Under the pieces are notes generated by a model. It worked only from the letters and a program-made list of their open reading frames with translations, searched no databases and was not told the DNA's origin. 64,000 bases of DNA from contig NW_026262668.1 in the NCBI RefSeq assembly GCF_021869535.1, forward strand, positions 28,644,001 through 28,708,000, in the 5' to 3' direction. Within the stretch, counting starts at the first letter, position 1. The number at the start of each line of letters is the position of its first letter. A program made the position numbers and the translations under genes. Positions 16,084 through 62,393 of the stretch are shown here, piece after piece. This stretch comes from Mytilus californianus (taxonomy: Eukaryota).

Positions 16084-19000
16084 ATGGAAATGGAAAAAAT
16101 GAGCAGGTCTTCGAGTTTAATGTCAAAAGAGAGTTTTGAATCAGCGATTGAACTAATGCCAACTGACAGAAGCACAGATGGAAATGGTCGATGTTTTTCA
16201 GATGAGAACCAGGATTGTAAAATTAACAAAAAATCTGGTGGAAAGAATAGTCATGTATTCAAAGACCACAAATGTTGTTTGTTAATTGCTACTATCGTAT
16301 TTATCATGTTTATAGTGTTTCTGAGTATCTTCATCATCATAAATTACAATCGCTGTGAGGTATATATAATTGACTACAATACAGATAATTTATTATTGTG
16401 TTTCAAATTAAATGATTCGGTAATAGCAATAGTTATATTTGTTTGTTTCAAGTAAATAAGAATATTCTTTTTTGTTTGTTTAATACTTTTTGCCAATGAT
16501 TCTATTCGTGAAAATTGTAGTTTTGCAATATATATATATGAATATTTGTACTGTATATCTACGATAATCATTATTTACACTAAATTGAAATATGACAAAG
16601 CTATTTAAAACGTGGTTAAAGTATGATTCTATCCGTTTAATGAGATATTAATTTTCACATTACAGCCAACTCGTGAATATTCTTTTGTTTCCGGAAACTG
16701 CACTAACTGTACAAAAGAAAATAAAACAGAGGAAAAAGGTATTTGATTTAAAACTAAAAGCACTACTACAACATTTTTGAATTATGATGTGTATACCCCG
16801 TTTATCGATGTGTACGCATGACATAAAACATGGCATGGCCAAACAAAATATTTGGAAAAGAGAATACAAAGATTTCCTTTTACTAGTTTTACAACTTTAT
16901 TTTTCATCAGATTGTATGGGTTTTGTTTCGAGTTCTTATAAAAATCACCTTAACAAGGAATATAAGATATACAGAGCGCACTTTGGATTAACCTAACATT
17001 CGAGCTTTTTAATTCTATTTCAACTTAAACGCGTTCTTATAAAAACTTCAATCTACAGCTTTGAATTAGATTTTTGTTTACTGTAAATTCAGAAATTTTT
17101 GCGATGCTTTATTTTTGCACAAATTGTGACGGAATTGGAATTGTCAAAATGTAATTTCGTATTTTAAACTTTGATACAATTATTTGTATTCTTCATTTAC
17201 TGAATTGAAACAAGTTATCTCGGAATTTTGTCCAATCTTCAAAAACCGCAATAATAATTGCACGCAAAAGTTCTGAATTTCAAGGTACCTTTTGTTTTTT
17301 TATGTTTCCATCTACGATAAAGCGTCCAACAAGTCGCAATTTAACAAGTAGCAATTCTGTTTTTAAAGTCAGTTTGAAGGGATGGTTTTCATTCTGATTT
17401 ATGAGAGGTTTACATTGTATGCTGTTGTAGAAAAAAGTAGCCGACAATCGCTCAATTGCATGTAAATTTGTCATTTCCCCGTCGATTTTTCACATTTAAT
17501 GGATTCAAAGCTAAAAGCTATAGAAATTCAGATACACATTTGGTTGGTGTCAAATAACTCAAAAGATCGGTCCAATGCAAAAAACCAACTAACATAAAAA
17601 ACAATAAAACCTATCAAAGATGTCACATTGATGAATTTGTACGCCAGACGCGCGCTTCGTCTACAAAAGACATTTCAGTGACGCTCGAATAAAAAAATGT
17701 TAAAAGACCAAATCTAGTACGACGTCAAAGAGCATTGAAAACAATGATTCCAAAATGTTTAACGAATTGTAGCTAAGGTGATCTATTCCTGGGGTAGGAT
17801 ATCTTAAGTATTCAAACAATTCAAAGTTTTGTAAACAGTTAACTTATTTATATTACCATAAACACAAAGAACCGATATAAGTGTCCTCGCAGTTATTGAA
17901 ATCAAGTTCAAAGCCAATTACACCTAATAAATCCAAGCATACAAAATATACAGGTAGTGTTGATTTAGACCAATAAAAAGGTTCATTCTATTTTTAAATC
18001 ATTTTTAAAGTTCCAACATTTCATCAGACAAAAATTAAAAGGTTAATCCCGTCACTAAAAATAGAAAAGATTTTCCAGTAAACTAATGGTATTGCATGTA
18101 GCAATCAGGAGGACAAAACACGAATACGTGTTTTGATTATACTGGCTTAGGAACGAAATAAAAATGTAGACAGAAACAGACATATTGATTTTTTTACAGA
18201 AACGAATAAGATTAAAAAAATGATTAAACATGCAAATATCCCCGAGAGGGACAAAAACTAGTTACAATTGATTGAAAAGTAACAAAGAGTGAAATAGATT
18301 TTATTAGATTGCATTTCATCAGAAATTCACACTGAGATCACCCCATTGATTGATAGAGTATTTGATCTTTTATTAACTGCTGATGGGTAACTGCCACTTT
18401 TTTGCCGCACAATGAAATCATCTATTCACGGTCTTCCATGTCATTTCATTCTTTGCTTGAATATATGTGTTACTTGTTAATAAATCAATGTATTCCATTG
18501 TTATGTTCTTTATCTTATGTTCTCTTCAGAATCACCTAGCAAAGAAGTCAAAGATACAGAATTTCAAGTTACACTTTGGGACTCATCGATGACAGTTATT
18601 ATAAAAACCCATGAAACGCTATCTCTCCAACTCAGTCGATATGACGACGACACCACAATGATGATATGTAGAAATAACAGAACGTCGTATGAGCTCTTCT
18701 GTAACTCCCAAGCGAAACGTAATTGCCAGTCTGTTCCTGTTCCTGTCAATAAATCAGTTACCATCAGAAATGAAACACAAGATGAACAGATCATATTTAA
18801 TATTGTGGCAAAATGTATAAATCAAAAAGTTGGTATCAAATGGATAAATATTTAGCCTGTAATTGGCATGTATTTTCAAAAACGTTATTAGGTTTCGTCA
18901 TCTTTCTGATTTGAAAAGAACTAAGCAATGTTACTTTAGAATAGTTTTTAATGATGCATGAATAGGTGAAGATGTTAAACTTCTCGGAAAATCTATTTTA

Positions 19001-19963
19001 CTTAATATTGAACTAGTTGTGGGATCCCAATTTAGATCACTCCATACTTGTCTGTCTTTACCCAAACTTGTGAGTTTATCATATACGCATGCTTGCTTTT
19101 CCCTGTGTGGATGAATAAAACCAACCAAGAGGGGAGGAATTCATTAAGAAGACACATGCGTCTAGTTAGTTGTACGAAGATATTTTCATAAAACATGTTT
19201 TCGAGGTTCGGATATTTTTTTGTGAATTAATCTCGGAGTACATTTGTTTTTGAATTGTAAACATCCTATCTGATACTACTACTTAGTTTATAACTGCATG
19301 CAGCTGGTGGTATATTTGTAATTTCCAGCTTATATCAATTGGCCAGTATCCAGTGTTTTCGTCGAGACATTATGAAAATTCTAAGTTTTTATTAAAACTT
19401 TTAATTTAGAAATTTATTATTTTTACTATAACCAGAGTTACAAATGTTTGCAGTGTTTAGTCCCTGTTCCTTAAATGTTTTGTTTCACAGAAATGTTTTG
19501 TATCGAGCGTACCTGTCGGAGGTAATCTGAGAAAAATTTTCATGCGCATGAAATTCAATATGATACTTTTTTGATTTTCTTTGACATGTTGTTCTAAGGG
19601 AGTTTTCCTGATTGTGTGACCGTTTACAAATTAAAAAAATAATTAAATCATTCTTCTATCCTGTATTCTTTTCTTTTTTCATTGAGAATTTCGTTGGAAA
19701 AACTCCAATTCGTACTTATACTAAATTTGTTTTGCTGTTTCACAAAAAAAAAATCACCTAAATCGTGTTGATAATTTATATCACAACTGCTTAAATTAAA
19801 AGGTTTACTTAACTAAAGTGTGTCTAGCGAATTATTGCGTGAATCTTTATTAACTATAACAGGAGTATATGACACTAGATATAGTGATGAAGTTTCAGTG
19901 ACCGGATCAATTCACTTTCAAACTGATAAACATCAAATTGTTATAAATTTGGTTCACGCCTAG
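16084..19963 (+). CDS. Gene A: uncharacterised type II membrane glycoprotein, ~250 aa. Exons 16084-16359, 16666-16738, 18530-18832, 19863-19963
   Basis: GT-AG junctions with phases 0,1,1; total 753 nt in frame. ~63-aa cytoplasmic tail, KCC, one TM (LLIATIVFIMFIVFLSIFIII), ectodomain with sequons NCT, NKT, NRT, NKS, NET. All exons open and junctions conserved in copy B. The last exon is the least certain. Confidence 0.8.
17081..17285. mobile_element. ~205-bp MITE with TA TSD (copy at 37021-37225; degenerate relative ~4745-4890)
   Basis: TA|CTGTAAATTCAGAA ... TTCTGAATTTCAAGG|TA imperfect TIRs. Confidence 0.7.
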
Positions 19964-21679
19964 ACAGATTGAACAAACATTCGAAAAAAGGAATTATTGC
20001 CAGAGTGCAAAGCAAATGCATGAACGGATTGATAGTGTTGTTAGCCTAACACATTTGAAAATATTTGATCAGAGACACTTAAAGACAACAACACATTGAA
20101 AGAGTATATACATCCAAGTATTCATACCAAATCTGAAGGATTGGTTATACTTGGATGATGTATGTCATTTTATATTATCGTCTCATATGTTAATTTAAAA
20201 CTATATTTAAAATAGTTTGAAACGGAATCTAATCAAAGGGATGAAGGTGTAAAAAAATGCTAGAAACAAAAATCATCGAAGGTATAAAAGAAATGTGTTG
20301 TTGCTTGTCGTTTTCAAATGAAACAAAAGACGAATATTAATATTTTTGTAGTCTTTGACTACACTGTTACCTTATTTGCAAGTAGAAGACCGTTACACTT
20401 TTTCGTGAATATATTACTTTTATTTTCCTTCACAAATTATGCTATAATGTGGAAACAACTTTTAATGCCCAATTTATTTCACAGGGTCATTGAAATGTAA
20501 ATATAATGTAAAACTGTCAACACTAATTTTGCAAATTATAAACCTATCTGTATTAGTATTTTCTTTTTGTGTTTTGTACATCTGTCATGTTGCTTTTGCT
20601 TAGTATCGGCTGAAAACTGTTGTAATGTTTTAAAAGATAAATTTGGTATTTTTTTCTAAAATCAAGCTTAAAATCCTTCAGGCAAACCGACCTTAGATGA
20701 ATTTTGCAACCTTTTTAATGCTCTTCTAAGTGTGAACCTCTTAAATATTTTGTTTTGTTTTTAATCTGGCGCCCCAAATTTAAATATCCTAGGTTATTGA
20801 AGTAACACGTTACGTTTAAGTTTACATAGTTGTTTTGTTATCTTCTATCCAGAATTTTGTTAGCACTTTTTGTCTTGAACATGCACATATACAGATACGT
20901 TTATTCCTTGAATTGAAATCTATCGTTTGAACTTGAAGTATAGATAATACAGGATGAAAGGTCTGCTTCATCTTTTGTTTATATTCCTCTTTATTCGAAC
21001 GAACTGTCAAAGCATATGGTTTTACCTACCTTTATTAAAAATATAAAAATCTACTAACGGAAGCTTTATCCTACCAAAACACTACTACAGAAGGTTACGA
21101 GGACGAACGACATAATTCTCGAATACTGTAACATCATAAATTGTTGGATCGCTACAATATCTACAATATCTATATATCAACCTATAAGTAACATTTTAGC
21201 TCTGTAATATCAATCTGACATGATTAACGGTTTTGTAGTGTTCCTGGCTTAGACAATTGCTTTACCTATTCCAAGATAGTTCTGATAAATAACGGCTTTT
21301 GGGGGATTTGCTTGGACCATGGAAATTGCCGATCCAGACTTCGGCAAGTTAAAGTCTCCGAATTGTAATACATCCAAGTCAAACACATAAATCAAACACC
21401 ATTTAATTCCTTATCAAATTTCCATACCTTTTATTCACAATTATGAAAAACAAAACAATCGAGGGTTCGATGAAATTAGCTTTTGTTACGGAAACGAATG
21501 TTGTATGATTTATCTGCTTGCTAATGGATTTGTAACGATTTAGACAGGAACATGCGGACCCAGGTTTATGGTAGGCAAGTTTGATGTTTTCTATGAGCAA
21601 TGCGTTCAAAGGCTGCGTCAGAAGTCAGACCAAATTTGATGATGCATATATAAAAGGAAATGATTACCTCCACATTACC

Positions 21680-21855
21680 CTTCCGGAGTACTTGAGATCA
21701 ATTCGGATTTTTGTGGTGTTCCTTTTGCTCTTTAGTTTTCTGTGTTGTGTTTTGTGTATTGTTGTATGTCTTTTTGTCTTTTTTTATTTTTTGCCATGGA
21801 TTGTCGGTTTGTCTTCAACTTATGAGTTTGAATGTCCCTTTTGTATCTTTCGCCT
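21680..21855 (+). repeat. Truncated SINE/LINE-tail-like dispersed repeat (copies ~40760-40935, and 46085-46235 on minus strand)
   Basis: CCGGAGTACTTGAG...TTTAGTTTTCTGTGTTG...GCCATGG...GAGTTTGAATGTCCC pattern recurs in both orientations. Confidence 0.6.
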
Positions 21856-24513
21856 ATTTTTTAGACATACCAGTTTTATAACTAAGTATTTGTAATACAA
21901 CAACTACCTCTTCTTATATTTCATGGAAAAATATCTAGGAAAAATACTAGACTGCAAAGTTGGATAGAAACCATACACAGTGAGGACTTTATTAACTTTT
22001 GTATCTCAGCTTGTGTTATTATAATGCACATAGGTGCGTGTGGATTAAATCATATACTAAAATTTTTGTACTTGCATATTACTTAATACTAGCCTCACCT
22101 GAATATATAGAAAAAGAAGATGTTGTATGATTACCAATGAGACAACTCTCCATAATAGACCAAATCACACAGAAATTAACAACTATAGGTCACCGTACGG
22201 CTTTAGCATAGTATAATAGTATGAATACATTGAAAATTGAAATTGAACAAATGAAACGATATCAGGTTCATGTTTATGAAACATCAACATAGGGCGAATA
22301 TATCAAGGGTAATAAAACGCAGTAGTAGGGAATAGGTTATATCACCATGACCAAAGGAGAAAAGTAGAACAATAGTTAGCTGAACACTAGATAGAAAACA
22401 AGAGATGAAGAAACATGGAGGTTAAATCAACCGCCCGTGAAGGAACTTCTAGTAATGACAGCAATCGTATAACTCGTCTTAAAATTCGAAAATATTCCAT
22501 GTGCCATAACAAAGATAGATGACAGGTCTCTTGTCTAACCGTTATATATTTCCTAATTTATAAACTATCGGTAGATGCAAGTTTTGTAACCCTTTTACAT
22601 GTTTGAAATAAAAATAACCTTTTTTTGGACAAATGTTAAACAAGACCAATACATATAGAAACAACATATACATTGAAAAATAAAGTAGCCCAAATGCTAT
22701 ACAGAAAACTAAAGCAAAAGCAACAAAACCCCTTTAAGTGGGATCAGGCTTCCCCTAATAAGTTTTGGCTCCACCAGTTGTGAAGATCGGTATCTATGAT
22801 GCGTTTGCTTGCTCATTTCAAGAAAAATCCGTCTAAAAGTCTCATTCGGTGATGTTACAATCAAAGAAAAGAGGCCTGGATGGCTTTTGAAAAATATCAG
22901 TGTTCAGCTGTGACATATCAAACAGAAATCCTGAAATATCGTAACAACTGATAATTATTACTCCATATGCTGGGTTTCTTGAATGTGAGTACCCAACAAG
23001 TAAACTTCGAGATGGAAAATCAAAGTCATCTCTTTTATATCAACCGACCTTTATTTTCGACTTTTAGATTCAAGTCAATGTATGAAGCTGACTGAAGATT
23101 TCTGATTTCTTTATTTTAAGTTCATTTAAATAGATGCGATTAACCTTAATATACAAAGTAAATTAAAATTACATTTTATAGATTTGGTGCGTCCGAAGCG
23201 CATTTCTAAATATACCTTCATCAAGAACGTAAAAGCTTACATAATTAAAAGCAAAGGCTATATTGCAAAACAAAAGATAGCAACATTAAGATCAACATTG
23301 AGGGAGTCCTAACCAAAGATTTTTAATAATTTCTCAATTTTCAAATTTCTGATTTTGAGAAAGGTATGTTAAAAAATCATTTCAGAACCGAAGCACAGAC
23401 TAATAAGCTGACGATGTCATTTGTGACTTGGAGGACTAAAGAGCTGAATCAGCAGCGGTATCGACCCGGTAATAGAAAATGAAAATAAACACCACTGTCC
23501 AAAGTGTAGGGCGCCCACTAACATGTTTAACCCCGCCACATTCTCTATGTGCCTGGCCCATGTCAGGAACCTGTAATTCAGTGGTTGTCATTTGTTGCTG
23601 TGTTACATATTTGTTTTTCGTCATTATTTTGTACATAAGTTAGGCTGTCAGTTTTCTTGTATGATTTTTTTTACATTTGTCATTTCGGGGCCTTGTATAG
23701 CTGACTATGCGGTATGGGCTTTGCTCATTGTTGAAGACCGTACAGTGACCTATAGTTGTTAATTTCTGTGTCATTTGGTCTTATCATTGGCAATCATACC
23801 ACATCTTCTTTTGATGCGTCCGATGCTTTCTTCTTGATAAACTGTGAACAAAAAAAACCCGCTCCATTGCAAGAATTTGAAATTCAAGAAAGTACAAGTA
23901 CTTGAATACATTAGGAGCTTTGTGACCAAAAGTGACATATAATGATTTGAAAAAAGTTAATCAACCGTAAAGTTCATGCTCTTTACCTGTATCGTTTCAA
24001 TATGTAATTGACGTACACCTAAAATATCATCCCCATGATATTTTTGACCCCAAATTATAGCTGATTTTATATCCACTTTTTTAGCCGACCTTCATTTCAG
24101 AATAAAGAAGTACATGTCATATTTTTGAGGCAATAGGTTTGTTAAATTGGTTATGTACAATTCATCTTCAAGTTCTTAATAAAGGCTTCATAGCTATTTG
24201 AAAATCTGCGACACTTGACCTGAGAATTTGGGAGACTGGAACCATTAAAGTCTTAAAACAGTCAATTATCTTTATGGCATCAACAATTTTATTTATTGTG
24301 ACTTCAACATTTTACTGGAACCTTTGTAATCTCTAGTAATGGCGGACAAATATCAATAAGGTATATTCAAACTGAGATGAAACACACATTCTATAGTTGT
24401 GTACAAAACATATAAAACATAATAAATGAAGCACAGACATTTATGGTGGAATGAAAATACAATTTTATCAGCATAACATTTTTTTCACTGAAAACATATT
24501 TGTTTCTTAACAG

Positions 24514-36040: not shown

Positions 36041-39000
36041 ATGGAAACGAAAAACATAAGCAGGTCTTCTAGTTTAACGTCAAAAGAGAGTTTTGAATCA
36101 GCGATTGAACTAATAACAACTGACAGAAGCACAGATGGAAATGGTCGACATTTTTTAGATGAGAACCAGGATATTAAAGTTAAACAAAAATCTGATGGAA
36201 AGAATAGTAATGTATTCAAAGACCACAAATGTTGTTTGTTAATTGCTACTATCGTATTTATAGTGTTTCTGAGTATCTTCATCATCACAAATTACAATCG
36301 CTGTGAGGTATATATAATTGACTACAATACAGATAATTTATTATTGTGTTTCAAATTAAATGATGCGGTAATAGCAATAGTTATATTTGTTTGTTTCAAG
36401 TAAATAAGAATATTCCTTTTTTTTTTTTTATACTTTTTGCCAATGATTCTATTCGTAAAAATGATAGTTTTGCAATATTCAATATTTGTACTGTATATCT
36501 ACGATAATCATTATTTACACTAAATTGAAATATGACAAAGCTATTTAAAACGTGGCTAAAGTATGATTCTATCCGTTTAATGAGATATAAATTTTCACAT
36601 TACAGCCAACTCGTGAATATTCTTTTGTTTCCGGAAACTGCGCTAACTGTACAAAAGAAAATAAAACAGAGGAAAAAGGTATTTGATTTAAAACTAAAAG
36701 CACGACTACAACATTTCTGTATTATGATGTGTATACACCGTTTATCGATGTGTACGCATGACATAAAACATGACATGGTCAAACAAAATATTTGGAAAAG
36801 AGAATACAAACATTTCTTTTTACTAGTTTTACAACTTTATTTTTCATCAGATTGTGTGGTTTTTGTTTCGAGTTTTTATAAAAATCACCTTAACAAGGAA
36901 TATAAGATATACAGAGCGCACTTTGGATCAACCTAACATTCGAGCTTTTTAGATCTATTTCAACTTAAAAGCGTTCTTATGAAAACTTCAATCTTCAGCT
37001 TTGAATTAGAGTTTTGTTTACTGTAAATTCAGAAATATTTGCGATGCTTTATTTTTGCACAAATTGTAACGGAATTGGAATTGTCAAAATGTAATTTCGC
37101 ATTTTAAACTTTGATACAATTATTTGTATTCTTCATTTACTGAATTGAAACAACTTATCTCGGAATTTTTTCCAATCTTCAAAAACCGCAATAATAATTG
37201 CACGCGAAAGTTCTGAATTTCAAGGTACCTTTTGTTTTTTTTATGTTTCAATCTACGATAAAGCGGCCAACAAGTCGCAATTTAACAAGTAGCAATTCTG
37301 TTTTTAAAGTCAGTTTGAAGGGATGGTTTTCATTCCGAATAATAAGAGGTTTACATTGTATGCTGTTGTAGACAAAAGTAGTCGACAATCGCTCAATGAC
37401 ATGTAAATTTGTCGTTTCCCGTCGATTTTTTCACATTTGATGGATTCAAAGCTAAAAGCTATAGAAATTTAGATACACATTTGGTTGGTGTCAAATAACT
37501 CAAAAGATCGGTCCAATGCAAAAAACCAACTAACATAAAAGACAATAAAACCTATCAAAGATATCACATTGATGAATTTTTACACCAGACTCGCGCTTCG
37601 TCTACAAAAGACGTCTCAGTAGCGCTCGAATAAAAAAATGTTAAAAGACCAAATCTAGTACGACGTCAAAGAGCATTGAAAACCAGGATTCCGAAATGTT
37701 TAACTAATTGTAGCTAAGGTGATCTATTCCTGGTGTAGGAAATCTTAAGTATTCAAAGTTAAGATATTGTAAACAGTTAACTTATTAATAATATTACCAT
37801 AAACACAAAGCACGGATATAAGTGTCCTCGCAGTTACTGAAGTCAAGTTCGAAGCCAATTACACCTAATAAATCCAAGCATACAAAATATACAGGTAGTG
37901 TTGATTTAGACCATCGAAGGTTCATTCTATTTTTAAATCATTTTTAAAGTTCCAACATTTCATCAGACAAAAATTAAAAGGTTAATCCCGTTACTAAAAA
38001 TAGAAAAGATTTTCCAGTAAACTAATGATATTGCATGTAGCAATTAGGAGTACAAAACACGAATAAGAATACGTGTTTTGATTATACTGGCTTAGGGACG
38101 TAATAAGAATGTAGACAGATTTTTTTTAAGAAACGAATAAGATTAAAAAAATGATTAAAAATGCAAATATCTCCGAGAGGGACAAAAAACTAGTTACAAT
38201 TGATTGAAAAGTAACAAAGAGTGAAATAGATTTTATAAGATTGCATTTCATCAGAAATTCACACTGAGATCACCCCGTTGATTGATAGAGTATTTGATCT
38301 TTTATCCACTGCTGATGGATAACTCCACTTTTTTTGCCGCACAATGAAATCATCTATTCACGGTCTTCCATGTCATTTCATTCTTAGCTTGAATATATGT
38401 GTTACTTGTTAATAAATCAATGTATTCCATTGTTATGTTCTTTATATGTTCTCTTCAGAATATCCTAGCAAAGAAGTCAAAGATACAGAATTTCAAGTTA
38501 CACTTTGGGACACATCGATGACAGTTATTATACAAACCCATGAAACGCTATCTCTCCACCTCAGTCGATATGACGACAACACTACAATGATGATATGTAG
38601 AAATAACAGAACGTCGTATGAGCTCTTCTGTAACTCCCAAGCAAAACGTAATTGCCAGTCTGTTCCTGTTCCTGTCAATAAATCAGTTACCATCAGAAAT
38701 GAAACACAAGATGAACAGATCATATTTAACATTGTGGCAAAATGTATAAATCAAAAAGTTGGTATCAAATGGATAAATATTTAGCCTGTAATTTGCATGT
38801 ATTTTCAAAAACTTTATTAGGTTTCGTCATCTTTCTGATTTGAAAAGAACTAAGCAATGTTACTTTAGAATAGTTTTTAATGATGCATGAATAGGTGAAG
38901 ATGTTAAACTTCTCGGAAAATCTATTTTACTTAATATTGAACTAGTTGTGGGATCCCAATTTAGATCACTCCAAACTTGTCTGTCTTTACCCAAACTTGT

Positions 39001-46756: not shown

Positions 46757-49653
46757 CAGATATGAGGTCAATTACTTTTGAAAGTAATTAATTACATTCA
46801 ATTACAATTCAAAATCTTCATTTAAATTACACATTACATTTGACTTTTTTTACCAATGTAATTAATTACTTTCCAATTTGTTGTAATGTAATACATATCA
46901 TACATTGCTTAATAGTAATAACAAATGAGATCTACAGTGAGTATTTTCAAATTCAGCCAGTATCAAAGAGGAGTAAAAGTTAGATACCTGGTGTGTTATG
47001 GGAAGAAAGAAAAAACATTCATTAAATGACATTAATCTAAAGTGCACATAATACTTTGTTCATTAGGACTAGAGGTATGGTTTAGCTTAATTCTCAAAAT
47101 GATAAAAAGCCTTACTTAATATTTTGAAAATATAGAAAATTTTGTTTTAATTACCTATTGAAATTTTATATTTTAATGTATTCATTGAAAATGATACAAA
47201 AAGAGAGCCATAATTTTAATATTTTGAAATGATTTTTTATCTTGATCACAACTTATTAAAATTATTTATTCTAAAGAAATGATTTAGAGAGCCTGACTTT
47301 TAAAAAAAATATACACTAGTTTTAATCACAATTAATTAATTTAAAAAAATCATGTACCAAGAGGTAAATTTATCTCTCTGTAATTGGCTTAGCACCTGTT
47401 TGACATGCAAACATAACTGTTGTAAAAACAGTCATTATATAGTTTATAATAAAACAAATAGCCAGAGGTTATATTTATTGATTAACTGTGTCTGAATATA
47501 CATTCAGAATATAGCAAAATGCTCTCGACCAATGAAATTGTAGGAATTGATGCTTCTTGATTGTAAGGAATGAATGTAAATCATTTTCTTAGTAAGGGAT
47601 TATCCTATTGTTTAGGCCTATTTACAGTTCAAATCAAAGAGTTTCTATAAATAAGTTACAACTGCCTCGAAGCACATTTATCAGCTTGAAAGGATTTGTG
47701 ATTGAAACTGATTAATAAAACATTAATTATGAAAAAAAAATAACAAAATAAATAATTAAGAATATTTTAAAATAACTTTATATTACTAAAAAATAAACTA
47801 TACCAGAGCAATGCAAAAAAAGTAAAAAAAAAATTTGGAAATTAAATAGAACTAAATATTTAGCTAATATGCTTGCCAGAACTCAGATTTCTGGATCCGC
47901 GTTTGGTAAAAAAAGTAATTTCAAGTATTCTGATAAAAAAGTAGATAATCTCTTTCTTTATGATTAAGGACGAGCGTTAGTGTTTTGTTTTCACGAAGAA
48001 AGGGATAATCAGTCTCTTATAAACTTAGAACTTAGAATATTGTAAAGTGCTCAAGGCTCAAATGATCTCTTGATTGGTTTTATTCAATAATTTGTTTCAT
48101 TGTCAGTGCAATGTTTATAATTAATGGATGACTCCCTTTGTAGGTATTTCAATTATATATTAGTCTTACTGATGTGAGGACTAACTTTTAGTTTTTGAAA
48201 TTCAAATAAATTGTGTTTTAGACTTAAGTTGACAAAACAGTACAATGAAATGGTAGAAATTTTCGTCATTGTGAGTATAAGTGTAAATTATGTTTTGAAA
48301 TTTTCCTCGGAGTTCGGTAATTTTGTTATTCTACTTTTTAATTAGGAATAATTGTTTAGTTTATTTACAGTTCTATTTAATTAATTCAAAATTAGAGTTA
48401 CAACTAAGTTCCATTCCACAAACAATTTTATTCCAGCGTTTTACATCAAATACAACTTAATTAACTAAAATTTAACAATTATAAGAAAATGTTTTTTTTT
48501 TAGAAATTTAAAAGTTACATTTGTTATTCGATTTCATGTATGTACCGGTATACTGGAAATGACTATTCCTACTAACTGCGGATACAGTAATCTGATTTTT
48601 GGGAAGCGTATCAGCTAAAGATTTAGGTTAAATCTAGTTTTAAAAGTTTTTTGTTTTCCTTTTCTTCTTTCACACTCCTTTTTTAATGTTTTGTTTTGTA
48701 ACTTCGAAGTTCTAAATATTCACATACTAACACAAACGATACCAATTATACTGCACACGCAAACTTCAAACGTATTTTGATTCTTTTTGTTTGTTTCAAA
48801 ATTCGCTTTTCAATTGATCATTCTGTAATTTTGATAAATGTGCTTAAGGCAGTTGTGACTGATCTATATACATTCTTTGTTTTGAACTGTAAGTAGGCCT
48901 AAACAATAGGATAATCCCTTACTAAGAACATGTTTACATTCATTCTTCACAATTAAGAAACACAAAATTCAACACTTTCATTGGTCGAGAGCACTTTGCT
49001 ATATTCTAACATCAACTAATTCATAAATGAAATAAACAAAAAATAAGTCATGCATTTCTCATAAACATTGCACTAACGATGGAACTAATTCTTGAATACA
49101 ACCAATCAATATTCTAAGTTTGTAAGAGAATAAGTATCCCTTTCATCATCTCGCTAACGCTCGTACTTAATCATAAAGAAAGGGATTATCATTCTCTTAC
49201 ATATACGTAGCTAACAAGCTAATTAAGGTATAAGACAGTGAATTACTAATGGTTTCTTTTAAACACAAATTATGGCATGTTTCTACAATCTTTTTTTCCT
49301 TCTTTTTTTGTTGTTCATTCAATACAAAATAAATAATCTCCCATGGTTGTGTAATTACAGAAAGTATACTGTGTAGGCTTTGCTTAGTCAGCTAACTACA
49401 TTTACTAAGGTCATGGCTTTTCATCATTTTTTGAGAAAACACAAGATTCAATCTTTCTGATCCAAAATTTCAAATGTAATTGAGTTGTAATTGAGTTGTA
49501 ATTGTCAATTACAGACAATTTTGGTTTTGTAATTCATTTCTTTCTATTACTTGTAATTGGAAAATGCTCAGTTACACATTACATTCAATTACTTGAGAAA
49601 TTGTAATTAATTACGGTCAATTACAATTACATATTTCAATTACCCCATGTCTG
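46757..49653. mobile_element. 2.9-kb non-autonomous hAT-like element with 8-bp TSD
   Basis: Imperfect TIR CAGA(T/C)ATG(A/G)GGT, AATTAC-rich subterminal repeats at both ends, perfect TSD GTTCAAAT at 46749-46756 and 49654-49661. The right end is duplicated at 60724. Confidence 0.85.
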
Positions 49654-52600
49654 GTTCAAATTTACGGGTATTATATCATAGTTAAATGAGAAATATTCCC
49701 AGAAGATGTATAAAGTATTCCTTGTTTGTTGAGCGAATTTAACCGTAGAGCATGTTTTTGTTTCGAAGTTATTTTTGTGTTTTAATATGATTTATTGAAT
49801 CTTTGAAATTAATCGGTGTTTTGTTTCGACGTTATTTTTGTGTTTTAATATAATTCCTTTAGTCTTTGAAATGAATCGCTCTTTTGCCTTTCTTTATATG
49901 AAACTGTAGTGCGTTAAAAATGATTTTTTTCTCCAACTCCATAATGCATTTTATTTGAAAAGAAGTAAATGTCTGCATTATTTATAAATAATGGAAGTCG
50001 AAAGTTTTATGAGAATCGTATTCTAGTCCCAAATTAGGTATAGAGTCTCGCTTAAGTCAAATATTGATATTATATATAAAATATATAAATAAACATATAA
50101 ATAACCGATAACCATCAAATACCCCATTTCTAAAAATAGCTTTTATATTATGTAAACTTTCACTTTTATATAGCACCCGGAATTAAACTGGTAAGCAAAT
50201 TCTTCTTGACAAATCTGGAATTTATTGTACAGATTAGTTTCAAAATTGATTCAGTACCATTTAAAAAGAAGTAAAAAGGAGCGATTGACAAAGACCATAT
50301 ACAAGAAATTATTAACTTGCGTGTGATGGCTTCTCCTTTGGACGATATGACAGATCAACCGAAAGAGGATGATGAACATTCGTTAGAAAATTATACGACA
50401 GAACCCGAAAGTCATATTTCACAGAAAGGATATGATGTATTATCAAGTGATATAGCAGAAAACAATAAACTTCTACCACAAACTGAACCGGACAAAGAAG
50501 CAGAAGTTGAAAAACATACAAGCTTTCTCTGGAAATACATGAATAACCATGCAACCCATGATCGAAGTAATGAACCACAACCAGAAAATAATTCAGAGTC
50601 AGATATTTGTAGCAAACCTTTGCGGATTGTTAATAGGAGCGAAGCCAGTTCTGTTACTGTTCAAAAGAACTTGGAACCTGAAAAAACACGACCTTATATG
50701 AAATACTTTATTTGGTCAATCATCTGTGTCTTTGTAGTAGTGGTATTGGTAATAGCAACGGTCTTTATAACAATTTTAATTTATAAAGAGGTAGGACTTT
50801 ACCTTTATGTATAAACTAACTGTATGACAAAGCAACATAGTCAGCGACAGTCAGACATTCATTATTTTCTTTTTTAATGATACCCCGTTACAAAAAAAAA
50901 GATAATTGAAACTGTGGACATGTAGAAAACTATCATAGTGCTTGCTTTTATGATTAACAATGATGTGATGATTGGTTGTACACCCCGTTACAAATATTTA
51001 TAAATGGAAAAATTTCAATAGCTAATACTTTCACTTTAATGATATTGGGATAATTAGATGGTTTGTTATTGTTTTCTATTTATTTTGCTTCATTTATTTA
51101 TTGTTTTATAATTTTTATTATTATCATATATATTTTTCTACTAAATGTGATATAATTTTTTTTTATTTATCTTTTTTTTTAAACAAAATGAAAACTTCGT
51201 TTGATTGGAACATTTGTCTGTAAATATGAGAAATTGCTCGTACTTTTTCAGTGTTGTCAGGAAACGCACTTAGCGGAAGGTACTCGGGAAGGACCAGTTT
51301 GCCAAGACCTAAATAGTACGTATATATATATGGTTTATCGGTTTCGCGTTTTATTTAAAAACATATATGTCTGAATGAATCTTAAAACATTTTACATAGA
51401 AAGAGATACAAGGAAAATTTTTAAAAAGTTCATTCATATTGTAATGTAAATCAAAATCTTATGAATGAAACAAAAATATTGAAAATGTATTGATTATGGC
51501 CAGAGCGTCTTTTTCCATTATTTTCCATTCCAAAACTAATATTTTTTGTCGCTGTTGGACGAAATCGTTTTTTTTTATGTTCATATGAACAAATGCAAGA
51601 TCAACGAAAATAGCACTCTAAGATTTGGTGTGCCCGAAATGCTTTACTGGATTCAACTTCACCAGGAACACTAAAACCAAATAGAATGAAAGCCAATTAT
51701 GTATAAGCGTTAAATACTTGAGGTGCTGAAAGACAAAAAGAGACCAGGAAGATAGGTTGTTCATGATAATACTTCTCTATCTATTTTTTGACTGGGAAAT
51801 TGAAACTTCAAAGGTGGTGAATCCTGTAAAATAAGAATAACAAACAGTACGAATAATATTCATAAACGATTTATAATTTTTAACACATACATTCATAAAA
51901 TGTTTTAAAAAACTACAAATTGCTCAGTAAACGTTTCCTTTCTCTTTTGTCTAAGACTAGAATGTTAATCGGTGCACACCCAACAGATTTCGCACAAGTT
52001 TGAATTCTAAGTTCACAAATTCAAACCTTTTGAGAAGAATTTTAAGAATTAAACAGATAACACACAATTCTGAATCTTGTGTTCACAATAGTTATTGAAA
52101 TACGTATACATCAAACATTTAAAATTCATGTGGAAGATAGATTTTGACAGTACAATCTATTAATCATAAAATGATGGCGATAACATGGGAGATATTCAGT
52201 TTTGATTTTTTTTAATAATCTTTGGAGAAAATCTTTTAATCTTATGTACACTAAAATATGTTATAATTTTTCTGTTGCAGTCCGTTTTTAGTTCCTCAAC
52301 AAAATCTGATTGGAATGAATGTGTGATGAAAATAAATGTTTTTTGACTTTTACCCGCTTTTTGTTACTTTTTGTGGTCATATGAGCTAAATGTATCCCCT
52401 GTTACATATCGTCCGTTAACTTTCACGTTTCCGTCTTTTGCACAATTTAAGCTTGACAGGATTTGCTAGTAGTGTTCGTAGCCAATGCATTGAAAATATT
52501 AAGTTAAAAAGTTCTATTATGCTTTATTACTATTTTTGTGACAATATGTTTGGACAAACAACGTTTTGCATCGAACGATGTATTGTGAGAAATAACGTCA

Positions 52601-53080
52601 CCTACAGATTTATGAATTGCATATGCATTCCAATTAAACTACTGTGATGTTATAATAAATAGTTATTCACCTAAAGCGCTGTATTTTTTAAGTGACCATG
52701 TGTGGTTCTTTTCGGCGTACCGGTCATCAGCTGACTGTGTCAATTCGCTTTTATATTACTACACCGATGCCTCATAGATATAAAACAAACAAATTACATG
52801 TATATTTTAAAAAGCGAAAATATCTGTAATTAATATTAATTGTTTAAACAATACCGTTGCACACAATAAATTGCAGGATAAAGACAATAAGTGTATAGTG
52901 TCTTTAAATATCAGATGTATTTGTACTCAGCTCAATTCTATCCACACATAAAGATACGGCTCACTTTAACATGGAACATATAACACAGGCTGGCTGATAT
53001 CTTCCGTGATTCTTTTTTCTAGTATAATAGACAAATATGGTTAAGAAAAATAACTAGAATTTATGAAGATTGTGAAGTCA
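47940..53080 (+). repeat. Second tandem duplication, copy C (partner ~57770-64000, continuing beyond the window)
   Basis: Colinear similarity up to the last base of the window (…GATTGTGAAGTCA at 53080 and 64000). Confidence 0.92.
50156..50167 (-). promoter_or_regulatory. IRF-E/ISRE-like motif AAAAGTGAAAGT upstream of gene C (identical copy at 61166-61177 for gene D)
   Basis: Exact match to the IRF consensus; next to a TATATAG and a 5' UTR donor CTG|GTAAG (50191). Confidence 0.45.
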
Positions 53081-56000
53081 TATCGCGTGCATATGTGTAA
53101 CCAATGAAAATGGGTTAAGAGCTAGAATGACTCGATTGACGAATTATCTTGGGCCTGTAGCTTTTTGAGATAGGGCGATGCATAAGATGTACGGAAGGCA
53201 TACTTTTGATAAAAACATATCTATATACATGTATCTCGAAATTGAGAAAAATACATTTGTCTATGCAGCAACAATATTCTCGACAATTGTATGTAAACCG
53301 GGAGGAAACCAAGCTCGTGCAATAACTTATAAGAATATTTGGGTAGGCGTTCCAGATATAGGTAATCCAATTAAGCGCTTCAGACGCCTGCAGTTTATAG
53401 AGTGTTTTCCTTTAAGGTGGCTGAAGCGTCTTTATTAAAATCCATAGAATTTTTTAATAATTTGTCAAAATGAAGTTTTTGTCATGCTTTTTTCAAAAAT
53501 AATATAAAAAATTATGGGTCACCGGACTTTTTTTCACGCTACAGGTTGTGCAAAACTGTCAGATTTGTATAGATTATGCATGGAAAATCCAATTTTGTGT
53601 GATAAAAAGAAAACTACATGATAGAATTTTAAGATAAAATGTGAGAAGATAGCTCTTGTAACATGCTTTCAGATAAGAAAAAGAAAGAATGGGGTCACCG
53701 AACTTGTTTTCTTGCTACATATTAAAATAGGTAGATTCACAACACTTTGTATTATAAAATTACTGTATCTGAGTTATCTCCCCTATTTTGGCAAAGTTGA
53801 AAAAAAATGAATCAAACACAAATATGGTGTTTTTTTTTAAATTACAGCCGTAAATATGATGAAACACAGAATTTTCTAAATTTACATCAAAAGTCTTACA
53901 CATGATTTACAAACTACTCTCAAAATTTGCACATTTCATTTAAGATCTAGACCATCTGTTATCTGCTAATTCAAAATCAAAGATGGAAGAAGACACCCGA
54001 GCCACCTTAAAGAACACATTATATGAAAATAGTAGACAATGTTTATGACATAGTATACGACGGTCTTGAAGGATCATACAATCGATGTATAATGAATAAA
54101 AGTTCAACGTTATTAAAATTGACAATTTAAAGACGATATTACCTTGCTTTCACTTGCACTAATAATTCTTATCAAATGAAGGGCCTCAGTAATCGATTAT
54201 AATGATCATTAGTTTGTCAACCCAGAGGTTTTGAGTTTGAACCCCGCTCGTGGCAGGTGCGTCCGAATTCAATCTTAATTGACTCGAATTGTCATTTTTC
54301 CTGCCGTCGGTCAACACTTCTCTCCATGTACTCTGACTTCCTCCACAAGTTGAAAAACAATCCACAGCATAGCCAAGAGTGCGGAAAGTTGCGTCAAACA
54401 CCGACAATATATTAATTGGCGATTTTTTCAAATATAATTAGATTCGTTTAAATCCCTTAATCATAGTTTGAATCAATAGTTTATTCCTGTCAATTAAATT
54501 CTTATTAACGAATACATTGAAAAGCAAAATTGAGGATATACTCATTTTTATCGTACAACGTGGCACTACAACGGTACAAGTAGTAACGTCACTGAGGATA
54601 CAAGTATCGTCAGTAAAAAGTTTGACGTTTTTCGAACTTGAACAAGATTCAGCATGTTATCAAGCACGTTTGCTTAGGACTTTTTATGTATCAGTAGGTT
54701 GGTCTTTCATTTTTCAATCATATATCAATTTAAAGAAAAACTATGTAACTAATGAACAAGAAGAATCTAATGTCGTAAAATTCTTTTTTTATTTTTATGA
54801 TTTTTATTAACAAATTTAGTTTTGTTTTAAGCATCATGTTAAAAATGTCTTGTATCTAAAAAAAATTAACAACTATCCTCATTTAAAAAAAGTGATCTAT
54901 CAACAAGCAGTATTCACATTTGAAATGAAAACAATCTGTTGAGTAGTTTATAATGTACAGTTTGCCTGAATAATTGTTACCCCAAACAAGAGCATATTTC
55001 TTGCTATATTTCTGCATTACCTTGATGTTTAAAAAAATCAATAATAAAATGTTATCATTTTGAAGTTTACCGCGAATATCCCGACAATCCTTAAAACGGA
55101 AATTGTTGTGTAAATTAATTAAACTGCCCGTTAAAAGTGAGATTAAATTTGTTTTCTCTTTTATAGTTGTTTTATCATTTTGGAACGACAAATTGAATAT
55201 AAGTTTTCAAGGGAAGAATGAAATATCAGTCTACCAGATTGACTATGAAGGAAATGGAGCCAGCAAAAAAAAAGTATTGTGTAAACATGGAAAAAGAGCC
55301 TTTAGTATCTCGTGTGGTGAAGAGGAAAACAATTCATGTGTTTCGATCCCTGAATTTCCTGAAGAAAATTCAACAACATTTTTTTGCACATTATATTTAC
55401 GGCATCGATATGCAATGCATACAGAAGAAAGCGGATTTAAGATTTAACATCCCAAAAAAAAATTTCACCCAGACAACATCGAAAAAGGCGCAAATGAAAT
55501 AGTTACAGTATTGGCTTGTGTGTGACTTTCTGCAATTTGTGATTATATTATCACTTTTCGTAAACAATGCAATAATCAGAAAATCATATGTAATAGGTAT
55601 ATCAAAGATGGCTAATCGAAAATAACTTAAACTTACTCGATCGCTAGTAGCGCTAACAGAAATCAATCATAAAGGTAACTGTTTGAATTGTTCATGTACT
55701 CTGTGGATCCATTACTAATTGAAAATGTTCAGTGTTATAAGGTGAGGTAAAATTTTAATTGTATCAGTATTAATTGTAAATATTTCGAAATAGAAAAAAA
55801 TGTCTGCATAGGATTAAAAGATGTGAGTTATTTTCGTTTGGGCACAACTTTTGCATTATACTGTGAAGTGATTAAAAGTATCACCCATAACCTATTGCAG
55901 TTCCATTGACCAAAAATTCTTCCAAATTTCCATAGAAGAACCAGAGACAAGTCATAATTGTTAGAGGTGCAAAGCGGAAAAATAGATCATACTTACAATC

Positions 56001-56474
56001 CTTCTAACATTTTAAGTCTAATTATCCATACGTTTTCTTTTAAAATGTCTTCTATATTAGCGAAAAACAGAAACCAATTAAATGTTCAGTAATATATATG
56101 TGGAGTTGTCTCATTGGCAATCATACCACATCTTCATTTTTATATTGGTATATGTTGTCAATAAGTTTCGATAGGAGATAATCTTATATCATCAAACTCT
56201 CATTTCATATGAGAAAGATTGGAGATAGATAAGACTGTCTCTGTAAAAATGTACAGATATTTGTAATCAGCGCTTAAATAATAACAGCGTTCCATTCAAA
56301 CCTATTAGGATTGTAAGTATGCTTTAGTTATAACATTCCGCAACTAACATTGATGGTTTGACTGTTGTTCTTCTACAGCAGTATGGTGAAAGTTCTGACC
56401 AGTTTCCAATTACATTCAGCGTTTCAAACTTCAATAAATGGAGAGGAACACTTATAATCAAGTCACTGCAATAA
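50326..56474 (+). CDS. Gene C: type II membrane glycoprotein of the same family, possibly disrupted. Exons 50326-50790, 51252-51315, 53269-53361, 55167-~55434 (frameshift near 55379-55385), 56257/56271-56312, 56379-56474
   Basis: Exons 1-4 join in frame (phases 0,1,1). Acidic ~128-aa tail, one TM. Exon 4 aligns to gene A exon 3 (W-x20-Y; C-x10-C-x7-C-x-S-I-P). The last exon QYGESSDQFPITFSVSNFNKWRGTLIIKSLQ* resembles the gene A last exon. The exon 4 donor is unresolved; unshifted, the frame stops at 55447. Confidence 0.68.
53416..54006. mobile_element. Kolobok-like non-autonomous element in an intron of gene C
   Basis: TTAA|GGTGGCT ... AGCCACC|TTAA. Confidence 0.75.
54181..54410 (+). mobile_element. 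Degenerate copy of the SINE family at 33072-33328
   Basis: GAGGTTTTGAGTTTGAACCCCGCTCGTG...AATCTTAATTGACT...CTTCCTCCAC...AAACACC. Confidence 0.75.
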
Positions 56475-58350: not shown

Positions 58351-59571
58351 CAGGGGTTCAAATTAACATTTAGTACTGGAAGGTCCAAGACCTTTGAAAC
58401 TCCAAACTGAAAGGTCCACAACATAAATCCCAGGTCCTACTTTATTTGAAATATTTCATAACTCAGTAAGATTAATGTGTTTTGGTCTTAGGTTACCTTG
58501 TTTAATTATATTTGAACTGCATGCAATATGTTGTTAAGTTTACAAATATATTGCCAGGCAACCATATAAATGTAGCACTAAACTGTCAGTGTCACTGTGG
58601 TATAACATGTATAATAATAAATGATGTAATTGTCTTACAAGTATATTATGAATTCAAATAATTTTTTTTTTTTTGGTATTGGGGAGGGTGTCACTGTGGG
58701 TGGGTGTGTTGTTTCAATTATTGGTAATTATACCATTATCTCAGGGCTTAGACTACTTCAGAATCATAGGGGGAAGTGACTGATAGGGAGAAGTGATGAG
58801 ATTTGAAAGAGAAGTGCTCACTCAAGGCGCTACAATGTTTGATGTTTACTATAATATAAAGGGCTATGTGTATCTTTTTGTATATTGTTCAATTCATAAC
58901 CGAGTATTCAATTAAAGTAACAGTTCAAATTCAAAGCTGTTTAAGTTCATCATATGTTGCACAATTATATTAGTTCCTCTCTTGTTAGAAACTACCAACT
59001 AAATATCTAGCACTAATAAAGAAAGAACTTTTTTTACATCAAAAAAGAAAAGAAAGTGTGGAATGCTTAATTTTTCCCTTTGGGATCAATATTCTGCTGT
59101 CAGATGTGCCATTCATTGGTCCGTAGTCATTATCCTTAGAATCCGGATTTCTTTCATAGCTGGTCCGTTTCCCGACTCCAATCAGTAGTTTGTACAAATA
59201 TTTCAATGGCTGACGAAAAAATGTACAAAAATAAACGATGTTTGAAACGCTATTTGGAAGGGAATATTACGTTTTTAATGAAACGAATGGATTACAAATT
59301 TACTTAAGGCAACTTTCATCACTTCTAATGGGTTAACAAACTTATTTTGCCGACAGTTAAAATGGTTCAAGGTACGGTCTTAAGGGGTATACCATGACAA
59401 TAGTAATATGGCTTTGAAATGACGATACTGATGGTTCAAAAGGTCGGCAAAGTTAATTTTTATTTTCTTTCAAATCGAAGGTCCGTCGGGCGTAGCAAGT
59501 AACCAAAATGAAAGTCCGATTGCAATAGTGGAAGGTCACGGACCTCGGACCACCGCTAATTTGAACCCCTG
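58351..59571. mobile_element. 1.2-kb non-autonomous TIR element (15-bp perfect TIR CAGGGGTTCAAATTA) nested in copy D of the hAT-like element
   Basis: TIRs at both ends; empty site TTTCATGTATGTACCGG at ~48533-48549 in copy C; no clean TSD. Confidence 0.85.
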
Positions 59572-61340: not shown

Positions 61341-62393
61341 ATGGCTTCTCCTTTGGACGAAATGACAGATCAACCGAAAGAGGATGAACATTCGTTACAA
61401 AATGATACGACAGAACCCGAAAGTCATATGTCACAGAAAGGATATGATGTATTTTCAAGTGATACAGCAGAAAACGATCAACTTCTACCACAAACTGAAC
61501 CGGACAAAGAAGCCGAAGTTGAAAAACCGACTGCAAAAAGCTTTCTCTGGAATTACATGTATAACCATGCTACCCATGATCGAAGTATTGAACCACAACC
61601 AGAAAATAATTCAGAGTCAGATATTTGTAACAAATCTTTGCGGAATGTTAATGAGAGCGAAGCCAGTCTGGTTACTGTTCACAACAGCAGTCAGTCAAGT
61701 ATTTCTAAGAAATCTTTGCAAAACGATAATTGGAGCCAATCCAGTTCGGTTGCTGTTCAAAACAACTTGGTACCTGAAAAAACACGACCTTATATGAAAT
61801 ACTTTATTGGGTTAGTAGTGGCATTGGTAATAGCGACGGTCATAATAACAATTTCAGTTTGTAAAAAGGTAGGGCTTTACCTTTATGTATAAACTAACTG
61901 TATGACAAAGCAACATAAGGCGACAGTCAGAAATTCATTATTTTCTTTTTGATTGATACCCCGTTACAAAAAAAAGATAATTAAAACTGTGGACATGTAG
62001 AATATCATAGTGCTTTGATGATTAACAATGATGTGATGATTGGTTGTACACCCCGTTACAAATATATAAAAATGGAAAAATTTCAATAGCTAATACTTTC
62101 ACTTGAATGATATTGGAATAATTAGATGGTTTGTTATTGTTTTGTATTTCTTTTGCTTCATTTATATATTGTTTTTTAATTTTTATTATTATCACATATA
62201 TTTTTCTACTAAATTTAATATGATTTATTTTATGCATGTATTTTATTTGTCCTTTTTTAAACAAAATGAAAACTTCGTTTGATTGGAACATTTGTCTGTT
62301 AATATGAGGAATTGCTCGTACTTTTTCAGTATTGCCAGGAAGCGCACTTAGCGGAAGGGACTCGAGAAGGACCAGTTTGCCAAGACCTAAATA
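61341..62393 (+). CDS. Gene D: paralog of gene C, 5' part only (exons 61341-61868 and 62330-62393; later exons predicted beyond the window)
   Basis: Open frames and conserved splice sites; exon 2 differs from gene C by 3 synonymous and 2 non-synonymous changes, supporting its coding status. Confidence 0.8.

What the first reader, a model, noticed from the sequence alone, without database searches (positions are those of the whole stretch)
16084..62393. Four-gene cluster of an unrecognised type II membrane glycoprotein family
Seen: A/B and C/D show no evident DNA similarity, yet their main ectodomain exons (both phase 1) align nearly gap-free. A: VTLWDSSMTVIIKTHETLSLQLSRYDDDTTMMICRNNRTSYELFCNSQAKRNCQSVP...IIFNIVAKCINQK. 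C: LSFWNDKLNISFQGKNEISVYQIDYEGNGASKKKVLCKHGKRAFSISCGEEENNSCVSIP...YIYGIDMQCIQKK. Shared signature: W-x20-Y, C-x10-C-x7-C-x-S-[VI]-P, C-I-x-x-K. Last exons are also alike (VYDTRYSDEVSVTGSI...IVINLVHA* vs QYGESSDQFPITFSV...LIIKSLQ*), and both subfamilies have a tail+TM exon followed by a short Cys-containing phase 0-1 exon. I do not recognise the domain as C-type lectin, TNF, C1q or Ig. Inference: a lineage-specific, tandemly expanding cell-surface receptor/ligand family, possibly immune. This is the best candidate for an undescribed system in the window.
Basis: partly seen in the sequence, partly recalled or inferred. Interest (0 to 1): 0.85.

Follow-up and report, generated by a model that had tools for sequence, protein, structure and literature searches.

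The report
Mussel-only family of small membrane proteins

Summary
The window is Mytilus californianus. The core observation holds. Two gene types with no DNA similarity (A/B and C/D) encode single-pass membrane proteins whose roughly 100-residue C-terminal domains are homologous. Reciprocal profile searches give E of about 1e-6 to 1e-7, and W, Y, three Cys, two Ile and a terminal W are invariant. RNA contigs confirm A's splice joints. Both types lie side by side in M. trossulus and on one contig in M. coruscus.

Corrections:
- The genes have three coding exons, not four.
- C is frame-shifted as assembled.
- D's main exon lies past the window's end.
- A fifth member (E) lies about 33 kb beyond D.

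No known domain or fold was found with Pfam, a PDB profile search, the ESM Atlas, Foldseek or VIA. The AlphaFold2 models were poor (pLDDT 43), so the fold stays open. The outer domain shows moderate purifying selection (dN/dS 0.35-0.8). The N-terminal tail evolves about neutrally.

Best reading: a genus-restricted type II surface protein family that displays a small disulfide-stabilised beta-rich binding domain. The immune role is untested. This is a real orphan family of modest interest.

The parts
16084..16359 (+). Gene A (LOC127729640) coding exon 1: hydrophilic tail plus TM anchor (residues 64-86), ends in phase 0
   Evidence: ATG and GT donor read directly. GT..AG joint 16359|16666 seen in RNA contigs X1 and X2. 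100% match to P0005. TM mean hydropathy 3.24.
16666..16738 (+). Gene A coding exon 2: 73-nt stalk exon with Cys, phase 0->1
   Evidence: Joints 16359|16666 and 16738|18530 in RNA contigs X1, X2 and X5. Exon model rebuilt from P0005.
18530..18855 (+). Gene A coding exon 3: the conserved domain, CDS ending ...KVGIKWINI then stop
   Evidence: RNA contig X1 record 1 runs 18528-19595 with no joint at 18832. P0005 ends here. The terminal W is invariant in all 12 aligned members.
18856..19595 (+). Gene A 3' UTR, at least to 19595; lower-depth contigs continue past 20200
   Evidence: X1 record 1 (depth 40) ends at 19595. Records 5, 6 and X2 record 12 cover 19593-20200.
19863..19963 (+).
   Evidence: Contigs run straight across the proposed acceptor at 19862/3 (X1 record 6: 19744-20200; X2 record 12: 19659-20200) and no joint 18832->19863 is seen.
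36041..36307 (+). Gene B coding exon 1 (paralogue of A, 9-nt shorter TM region), ORF intact
   Evidence: Translation. tblastn 79% identity to A exon 1. CDS intact.
36606..36678 (+). Gene B coding exon 2
   Evidence: Same boundaries as A by sequence identity. Translation.
38459..38784 (+). Gene B coding exon 3 with stop; domain 95% identical to A
   Evidence: A-type HMM E=4.5e-60.
50326..50790 (+). Locus C coding exon 1 (tail + TM), ORF open
   Evidence: 65% identity to D exon 1.
51252..51315 (+). Locus C exon 2, 64 nt, phase 0->1
   Evidence: AG acceptor and GT donor read directly.
55167..55447 (+). Locus C main exon, frame-shifted relative to D. It has a +1 insertion in the T run 55379-55385 and a 2-nt deletion after 55443. 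The frame in use stops at 55445-55447 and loses the last conserved Cys, Ile, Lys and Trp.
   Evidence: DNA alignment C vs D. Frames. No C-derived protein was returned.
56379..56474 (+).
   Evidence: D-type proteins and mRNA contig L001 end in the main exon. The main exon has no GT donor between 55385 and 55480. The only acceptor here would be phase 0. A4 vs C4 p=0.07.
61341..61868 (+). Gene D (LOC127729645) coding exon 1 (tail + TM)
   Evidence: 100% match to P0011 residues 1-176.
62330..62393 (+). Gene D coding exon 2. Exon 3 lies outside the window (L003 10173-10507, equivalent to window 65513-65847).
13977..24036 (.). First copy of the ~20-kb tandem duplication carrying A; second copy 33938-43126 carries B (93-97% identity)
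   Evidence: Self-blastn.
47945..53080 (.). First copy of the ~11-kb duplication carrying the 5' part of C; second copy 57796-64000 carries D (88-94% identity) and runs off the window
   Evidence: Self-blastn.

Best explanation
This is a real, transcribed gene family, so far seen only in Mytilus, of small (about 200-310 aa) single-pass membrane proteins. Each gene has three coding exons. The first encodes a hydrophilic, fast-evolving N-terminal tail plus one hydrophobic anchor. The second is a short stalk exon with one or two Cys. The third encodes a ~100-residue beta-rich domain with a conserved W..Y..C..C..C-x-P..C..K..W signature that ends the protein. Two old subfamilies, A-type and D-type, share this architecture and its intron phases and sit next to each other. 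In M. californianus, recent segmental duplications made A/B and C/D, C has decayed, and a further D-type gene (E) lies downstream. Shown here: homology of the two subfamilies, splicing and transcription of A, mRNA for both types, synteny in three species, purifying selection on the C-terminal domain only, and no detectable known domain. Inferred: the proteins insert N-in/C-out (type II signal anchor) and display a disulfide-stabilised, probably N-glycosylated binding module on the cell surface or in the secretory lumen. The juxtamembrane CC of the A-type may be palmitoylated, and the odd stalk Cys may link chains. The function is most likely recognition or binding through the outer domain, with the tail acting as a loosely constrained spacer. 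The partner and the biological role (immune or other) are unknown.
For: Identity and models: P0005 (XP_052093455, M. californianus) equals A exons 1-3 and P0011 equals D. Splicing and expression: GT..AG joints 16359|16666 and 16738|18530 appear in contigs of three runs at depth 40-182. Intronless full-CDS mRNA contigs exist for both types (L001, L007). Homology of the subfamilies. Two clades have 100/100 support. Synteny: M. trossulus has an A-type gene at L005 10001-13356 and a D-type gene at 16912-22477. M. coruscus P0006/P0014 and P0013 lie on one 193-kb contig. Selection: dN/dS of the C-terminal domain is 0.35-0.79, significantly below 1 in three pairs (p=0.006-0.03), while the tail is at 0.9-1.3. 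Topology: there is one TM with mean hydropathy 2.9-3.5 and no N-terminal hydrophobic signal. In the A-type the N-side flank carries +1 to +4 and the C-side flank 0 to -3, with 4-7 sequons and 5-7 Cys on the C-terminal side. No known family.
Against: The fold is unresolved (AlphaFold2 pLDDT 43, pTM 0.38 for both subfamilies), so a very diverged known fold cannot be excluded. In the D-type the charge rule is ambiguous (N-flank +2, C-flank 0 to +3) and most NxS/T sequons sit in the N-terminal tail. Constraint is weak overall: whole-gene dN/dS is 0.5-1.2, and several pairs are not significantly below 1. Expression is patchy. One deep RNA run gave no exon reads, and eight same-species runs held next to none of the sampled words. 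Tissue and condition are unknown. Surface location, glycosylation, disulfides and any binding activity were not tested.
Confidence: 0.6

Rival explanations
1. The proteins are membrane-anchored precursors of a shed soluble factor. As with TNF- or EDA-type ligands, the type II protein would be cleaved in the stalk or at basic sites, and the small domain would act as a secreted signal or effector.
For: Type II layout with a ~30-residue stalk between the TM and the domain. D-type proteins end in a polybasic tail (...RHHRKRRK / ...RHRKRPK). Selection acts on the domain and not on the tail.
Against: No conserved dibasic or furin-type site in the stalk of either subfamily (alignment). The polybasic stretch is C-terminal to the domain and absent from the A-type. 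No TNF homology domain was found. Shedding was not tested.
Confidence: 0.15
2. These are young orphan genes drifting almost neutrally, transcribed but with little or no organismal function. Duplication and decay, as in C, would be the main dynamics.
For: Whole-gene dN/dS is 0.5-1.2 and the tail is at about 1. C carries two frameshifts. Expression is absent in many runs. No homologue was found outside Mytilus among 1.84 billion representatives.
Against: Open reading frames, TM, intron phases and the W/Y/Cys signature are kept in both subfamilies. These are about 3 substitutions per site apart and present in at least three species each. Domain dN/dS is significantly below 1 in three independent pairs. 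Transcripts reach good depth.
Confidence: 0.15
3. The proteins reside on internal membranes (ER, Golgi or endolysosome) rather than at the cell surface. Their luminal domain would then have a housekeeping or cargo-related role.
For: Type II topology with a single anchor is typical of Golgi residents (general knowledge). Three of four D-type tails (D, C and the E type) contain an acidic-dileucine-like string: ENDQLL, ENNKLL, EKEKLL.
Against: The motif is not kept in M. trossulus (DDNLL) or in the A-type. The luminal domain is far smaller than any glycosyltransferase. Fast evolution and copy-number change are unusual for housekeeping residents.
Confidence: 0.1

Closest known systems
TNF-superfamily ligands (type II membrane proteins with a C-terminal TNF homology domain)
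   Same: N-terminal cytoplasmic tail, signal anchor, stalk, and a compact all-beta C-terminal domain that ends the protein. Members are often tandemly duplicated and expanded in bivalves (general knowledge).
   Different: No match to the TNF Pfam model at E<=10 in any of 12 members. The domain is ~100 aa rather than ~150. There are no THD motifs. The fold searches give no TNF hit.
C-type lectin-like type II receptors (CD69/NKG2/Ly49 type)
   Same: Small type II proteins with a stalk Cys that could link chains and a Cys-stabilised C-terminal domain. They occur in gene clusters with rapid turnover.
   Different: No Lectin_C match. The predicted secondary structure is almost all strand with no long CTLD helices. 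The Cys spacing is different.
CS / p23 / alpha-crystallin-type seven-strand beta sandwiches
   Same: These are the best, but weak, structural matches of the low-confidence D model (Z 4.5-3.6, 62-78 residues aligned). They are similar in size and strand count.
   Different: Z is below the tool's stated background (typical best Z is 7-8). The model has pLDDT 43. CS and HSP20 domains are cytosolic and lack disulfides. There is no sequence signal.
Taxonomically restricted ('orphan') gene families of Mytilus with copy-number variation
   Same: Genus-restricted, uncharacterised in all databases, tandemly duplicated, with decayed copies and fast evolution.
   Different: This is a category rather than a family. 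Here both subfamilies are syntenic and conserved across several species, which argues for a kept function.

Membership tests
TNF ligand superfamily | TNF homology domain detectable by profile (Pfam PF00229) | tested here: not met
   hmmscan of exon translations and of 12 ectodomains at E<=10 lists no TNF model. The PDB profile search gives 0 hits at E<=10.
TNF ligand superfamily | Ten-strand jelly-roll fold of ~150 aa forming trimers | tested here: inconclusive
   The domain is only ~100 aa. The models are poor (pLDDT 43) and give no TNF match. Oligomeric state cannot be tested here.
C-type lectin-like domain receptors | CTLD profile match and alpha/beta fold with WIGL-type core | tested here: not met
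   No Lectin_C hit. The predicted structure is 7-8 strands and one short helix.
C1q domain proteins | C1q globular domain profile | tested here: not met
   No C1q hit at E<=10.
Immunoglobulin-like domains | Ig/FN3 profile match or Ig fold with the canonical Cys-Trp-Cys core | tested here: inconclusive
   No Pfam Ig model hit. The order W..Y..C..C..C..C..W differs from the Ig core. Foldseek lists Ig-like chains only at E about 1 and TM<0.3.
BRICHOS type II proteins | BRICHOS domain profile | tested here: not met
   No BRICHOS hit at E<=10.
Type II (N-in) single-pass membrane proteins, as a topological class | No cleavable signal peptide, one TM, more positive charge on the N-terminal flank | tested here: met
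   The N termini are hydrophilic. There is one segment with mean hydropathy 2.9-3.5. A-type flanks are +1..+4 versus 0..-3. The D-type is ambiguous at +2 versus 0..+3. This is a prediction only, with no experiment.
Beta-propeller repeat proteins (P0003/P0004-type hits) | Homology of the domain to the repeat unit | tested here: not met
   The library hits arise from one 38-residue, ~28-bit match summed over 5-11 repeats. With the family profile, the match falls to E=0.5, probability 0.1%.

The most novel reading that the evidence does not exclude
The C-terminal module is a new extracellular protein fold confined to Mytilus. The adjacent A-type/D-type genes encode a fast-evolving recognition pair or receptor set (immune, gamete or self/non-self) whose copy number and integrity vary between individuals.
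Probability: 0.12. Interest if true: 0.6.

Novelty: new variant of a known kind. Interest (0 to 1): 0.3.

Why it matters
Mussel genomes hold many uncharacterised genes, some present in only part of the individuals. This cluster is a clean, small example of such a family. It has two old subfamilies kept side by side in several species, recent duplication and decay, real transcripts, and selection focused on one small domain with no known relative. If the domain proves to be a binding module, it would add a mussel-specific surface recognition family and possibly a new fold. As it stands, it is a well-delimited target for structure and expression work rather than a surprise.

Tried and rejected
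1. RNA contigs do not splice there, all public models and mRNA contigs end in the main exon, and the two peptides are not significantly alike.
2. A donor at 18832/18833 that would remove the conserved GIKW is rejected. The W is invariant across both subfamilies.
3. The library hits P0003 (4112-aa NACHT repeat protein) and P0004 (634-aa repeat protein) are rejected as repeat-summed chance matches.
4. Weak Pfam hits (Glce_b_sandwich, PdaC, ESCRT-II and others, E 0.02-0.2) occur in at most 1-2 of 12 members and are inconsistent, so they are rejected.
5. AlphaFold2 on 12-sequence alignments of both subfamilies gave pLDDT 43. Foldseek against PDB gave nothing at E<=0.001. The VIA wide search gave a best Z of 4.5, below background. 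The ESM Atlas's own models are poor (pLDDT 0.40-0.50) with TM<0.5 matches. None of these are used as evidence of a fold.
6. Literature searches for locus names, protein accessions and run ids found no paper.
7. Earlier notes of this scan hold nothing on this family.
8. Exon 2 of A and of C show no significant sequence similarity (p=0.65). Only position, size and phase are shared.
Full report
**What the window is.** The 64-kb window has 32% G+C and no N runs.

**Checking the observation.**
- Self-comparison shows a ~20-kb tandem duplication (13977-24036 against 33938-43126, 93-97% identity) that carries A and B. A ~11-kb duplication (47945-53080 against 57796-64000, 88-94%) carries the 5' parts of C and D.
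- There is no DNA similarity between the A/B and C/D loci (0 HSPs).
- The protein similarity of the main exons is real. Smith-Waterman score is 61 against 24.1+-4.3 in 2000 shuffles. BLASTP of A against D gives E=4e-5 over 103 residues. hhalign gives E=2e-5 and 2e-6.
- An unbiased test agrees. An A-type HMM built only from other species' proteins ranks C's main exon as the best non-A/B ORF among all 1134 six-frame ORFs of the window (E=0.002, next 0.45). It hits five intact D-type proteins at 2e-7 to 1e-6 and the M. trossulus D-type at 1.5e-4. A D-type HMM hits the B and A exons at 3e-7 and 8e-6, with the next hit at 0.6.
- Invariant columns across 12 sequences are W, Y, three Cys, two Ile and a C-terminal W. 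A fourth Cys, V-P, T and two Lys are nearly invariant.

For A, the sequence gives these coding exons:

| Exon | Coordinates | Content | Phase |
|---|---|---|---|
| 1 | 16084-16359 | tail + TM | ends in phase 0 |
| 2 | 16666-16738 | 73-nt stalk exon | 0->1 |
| 3 | starts 18530 | conserved domain | starts in phase 1 |

- RNA-derived contigs from three runs show exactly the joints 16359|16666 and 16738|18530 (GT..AG).
- One 1671-nt contig then runs unbroken from 18528 to 19595. Other contigs cross 19862/19863 without a joint.
- The CDS therefore ends ...KVGIKWINI* at 18852-18855, as in RefSeq.
- The same holds for the D-type. P0011 ends in the main exon (L003 10173-10507). Intronless mRNA contigs carry the full CDS of a D-type (L001, 299 aa) and of an A-type (L007, 229 aa).
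- The terminal motif K-[VA]-[GDE]-[IL]-[KR]-W is shared by both subfamilies. This would not be so if a donor were used at 18832.
- The two 'last exon' peptides are not significantly alike (p=0.07).

**C and D.**
- D has only exons 1 (61341-61868) and 2 (62330-62393) in the window. Its main exon lies about 1.5 kb past the end.
- Against D, C has an in-frame 3-nt loss in an A run, a +1 insertion in a run of seven T (55379-55385) and a 2-nt deletion after 55443.
- In the frame set by exons 1-2, C ends ...SGFKI* at 55447. It loses the last conserved Cys, Ile, Lys and Trp.
- No C-derived protein came back from the searches.
- The first indel sits in a homopolymer and could be an assembly error. The second does not.

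**The family beyond the window.**
- A-type proteins exist in M. coruscus, M. trossulus, M. edulis and M. galloprovincialis.
- D-type proteins exist in M. coruscus and M. trossulus. A further M. californianus gene, E (P0016, LOC127729649, 299 aa), starts about 33 kb beyond the end of D.
- In M. trossulus, an A-type gene is followed 3.5 kb later by a D-type gene with the same three-exon, same-phase structure.
- In M. coruscus, both types lie on one 193-kb contig.
- A tree of the domains gives two clades with 100/100 support, about 3 substitutions per site apart. A/B and C/D are young species-specific pairs.
- A search of the A-type domain against 1.84 billion representative proteins found only two true relatives, both with Mytilus A-type sequence. 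Both repeat-protein hits there are artefacts of summing one short match over many repeats.

**What the proteins look like.**
- Each has a hydrophilic N-terminal tail of 55-155 residues. The tail is near neutral in the A-type and strongly acidic in the D-type. There is one strongly hydrophobic segment and no N-terminal signal.
- In the A-type, the N-side flank is more positive (+1..+4 against 0..-3). The C-terminal part carries 5-7 Cys and 4-7 N-x-S/T sequons, which points to N-in/C-out.
- In the D-type, the charge rule is ambiguous and most sequons lie in the Asn/Ser-rich tail.
- A-type proteins have a conserved CC at the cytosolic edge of the anchor.
- AlphaFold2 predicts matching strand positions in both subfamilies (five strands from the W to the second Cys, then two or three more). 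Confidence is low, at pLDDT 43.

**Selection.** Nei-Gojobori estimates give dN/dS of 0.35-0.79 for the C-terminal domain. This is significantly below 1 in three pairs (p=0.009, 0.03, 0.006). The tail plus anchor is at 0.9-1.3. A and B differ by 18 non-synonymous and 1 synonymous change in the tail, which is not significant. The functional part is therefore the C-terminal domain.

**Comparison with known families.**
- Pfam gives nothing consistent at E<=10 for 12 members.
- A family profile finds no PDB sequence at E<=10.
- The ESM Atlas gives no feature hit and only TM<0.5 matches of its own poor models.
- Foldseek finds nothing at E<=0.001.
- The exhaustive VIA search peaks at Z 4.5 (CS/p23-type sandwiches), below that tool's stated background.
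For Ig the tests are inconclusive. The fold remains open because the models are poor.

**Verdict.** The finding is a real, expressed, genus-restricted family with two syntenic subfamilies and an unassigned small domain under purifying selection. It is not a four-gene, four-exon cluster. In the window there are two intact genes (A, B), one decayed copy (C) and the first two exons of a fourth (D), with at least one more member outside. The function is unknown, and a surface binding role is the most economical inference. The immune idea is untested. Expression is uneven between runs, but the coded run labels give no tissue. No paper names these loci.

Noticed in passing
window 16146-16258 and 18582-19467: RNA contigs of run X2 (same sample as X1) carry a second A-like form. 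It has several substitutions and a 6-nt insertion (TCATGA) after 16258 and is spliced at the same joints. It does not match B, so it is a divergent allele or an unassembled copy.
   Followed up: partly
window 17079-17110, 17636-17705 and 17811-17842 (intron 2 of A): Short stretches have very high RNA depth (up to ~1400) and loose ends on both sides in all runs. They look like pieces of an abundant dispersed repeat rather than part of gene A.
   Followed up: no
window 9347-9867 vs 24346-24847: The A/B duplication region also holds a second copy (85.6% identity) of sequence that earlier notes call the DNTTIP2 terminal exon. The upstream neighbour was therefore partly copied along with gene A.
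   Followed up: partly
window 5446-7350: A long minisatellite with a ~56-nt period and about 34 units at 92-95% identity dominates the self-comparison.
   Followed up: no
window 11406-12648 and 26191-27444: A second tandem array with a ~160-nt period is present in both copies of the 20-kb duplication.
   Followed up: no
P0006 (M. coruscus CAC-series protein, 224 aa): An A-type family member is named 'SLC6A4' in the M. coruscus annotation. It has no transporter domain and the name looks like an annotation error. It also has Ser in place of the fourth conserved Cys.
   Followed up: partly
L006 10001-12062 (M. californianus contig, about 33 kb beyond D): A fifth family member, E (LOC127729649, 299 aa), is 77% identical to D in the domain and 45% in the tail. 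It is nearly identical to an mRNA contig from run SRR13891816. About 17 kb between D and E was not seen and could hold more copies.
   Followed up: partly
P0013 (M. coruscus, 307 aa) and P0010 (M. edulis, 198 aa): These public gene models lack all or part of the membrane anchor that their relatives have. They are probably mis-predicted exon boundaries rather than soluble isoforms.
   Followed up: no
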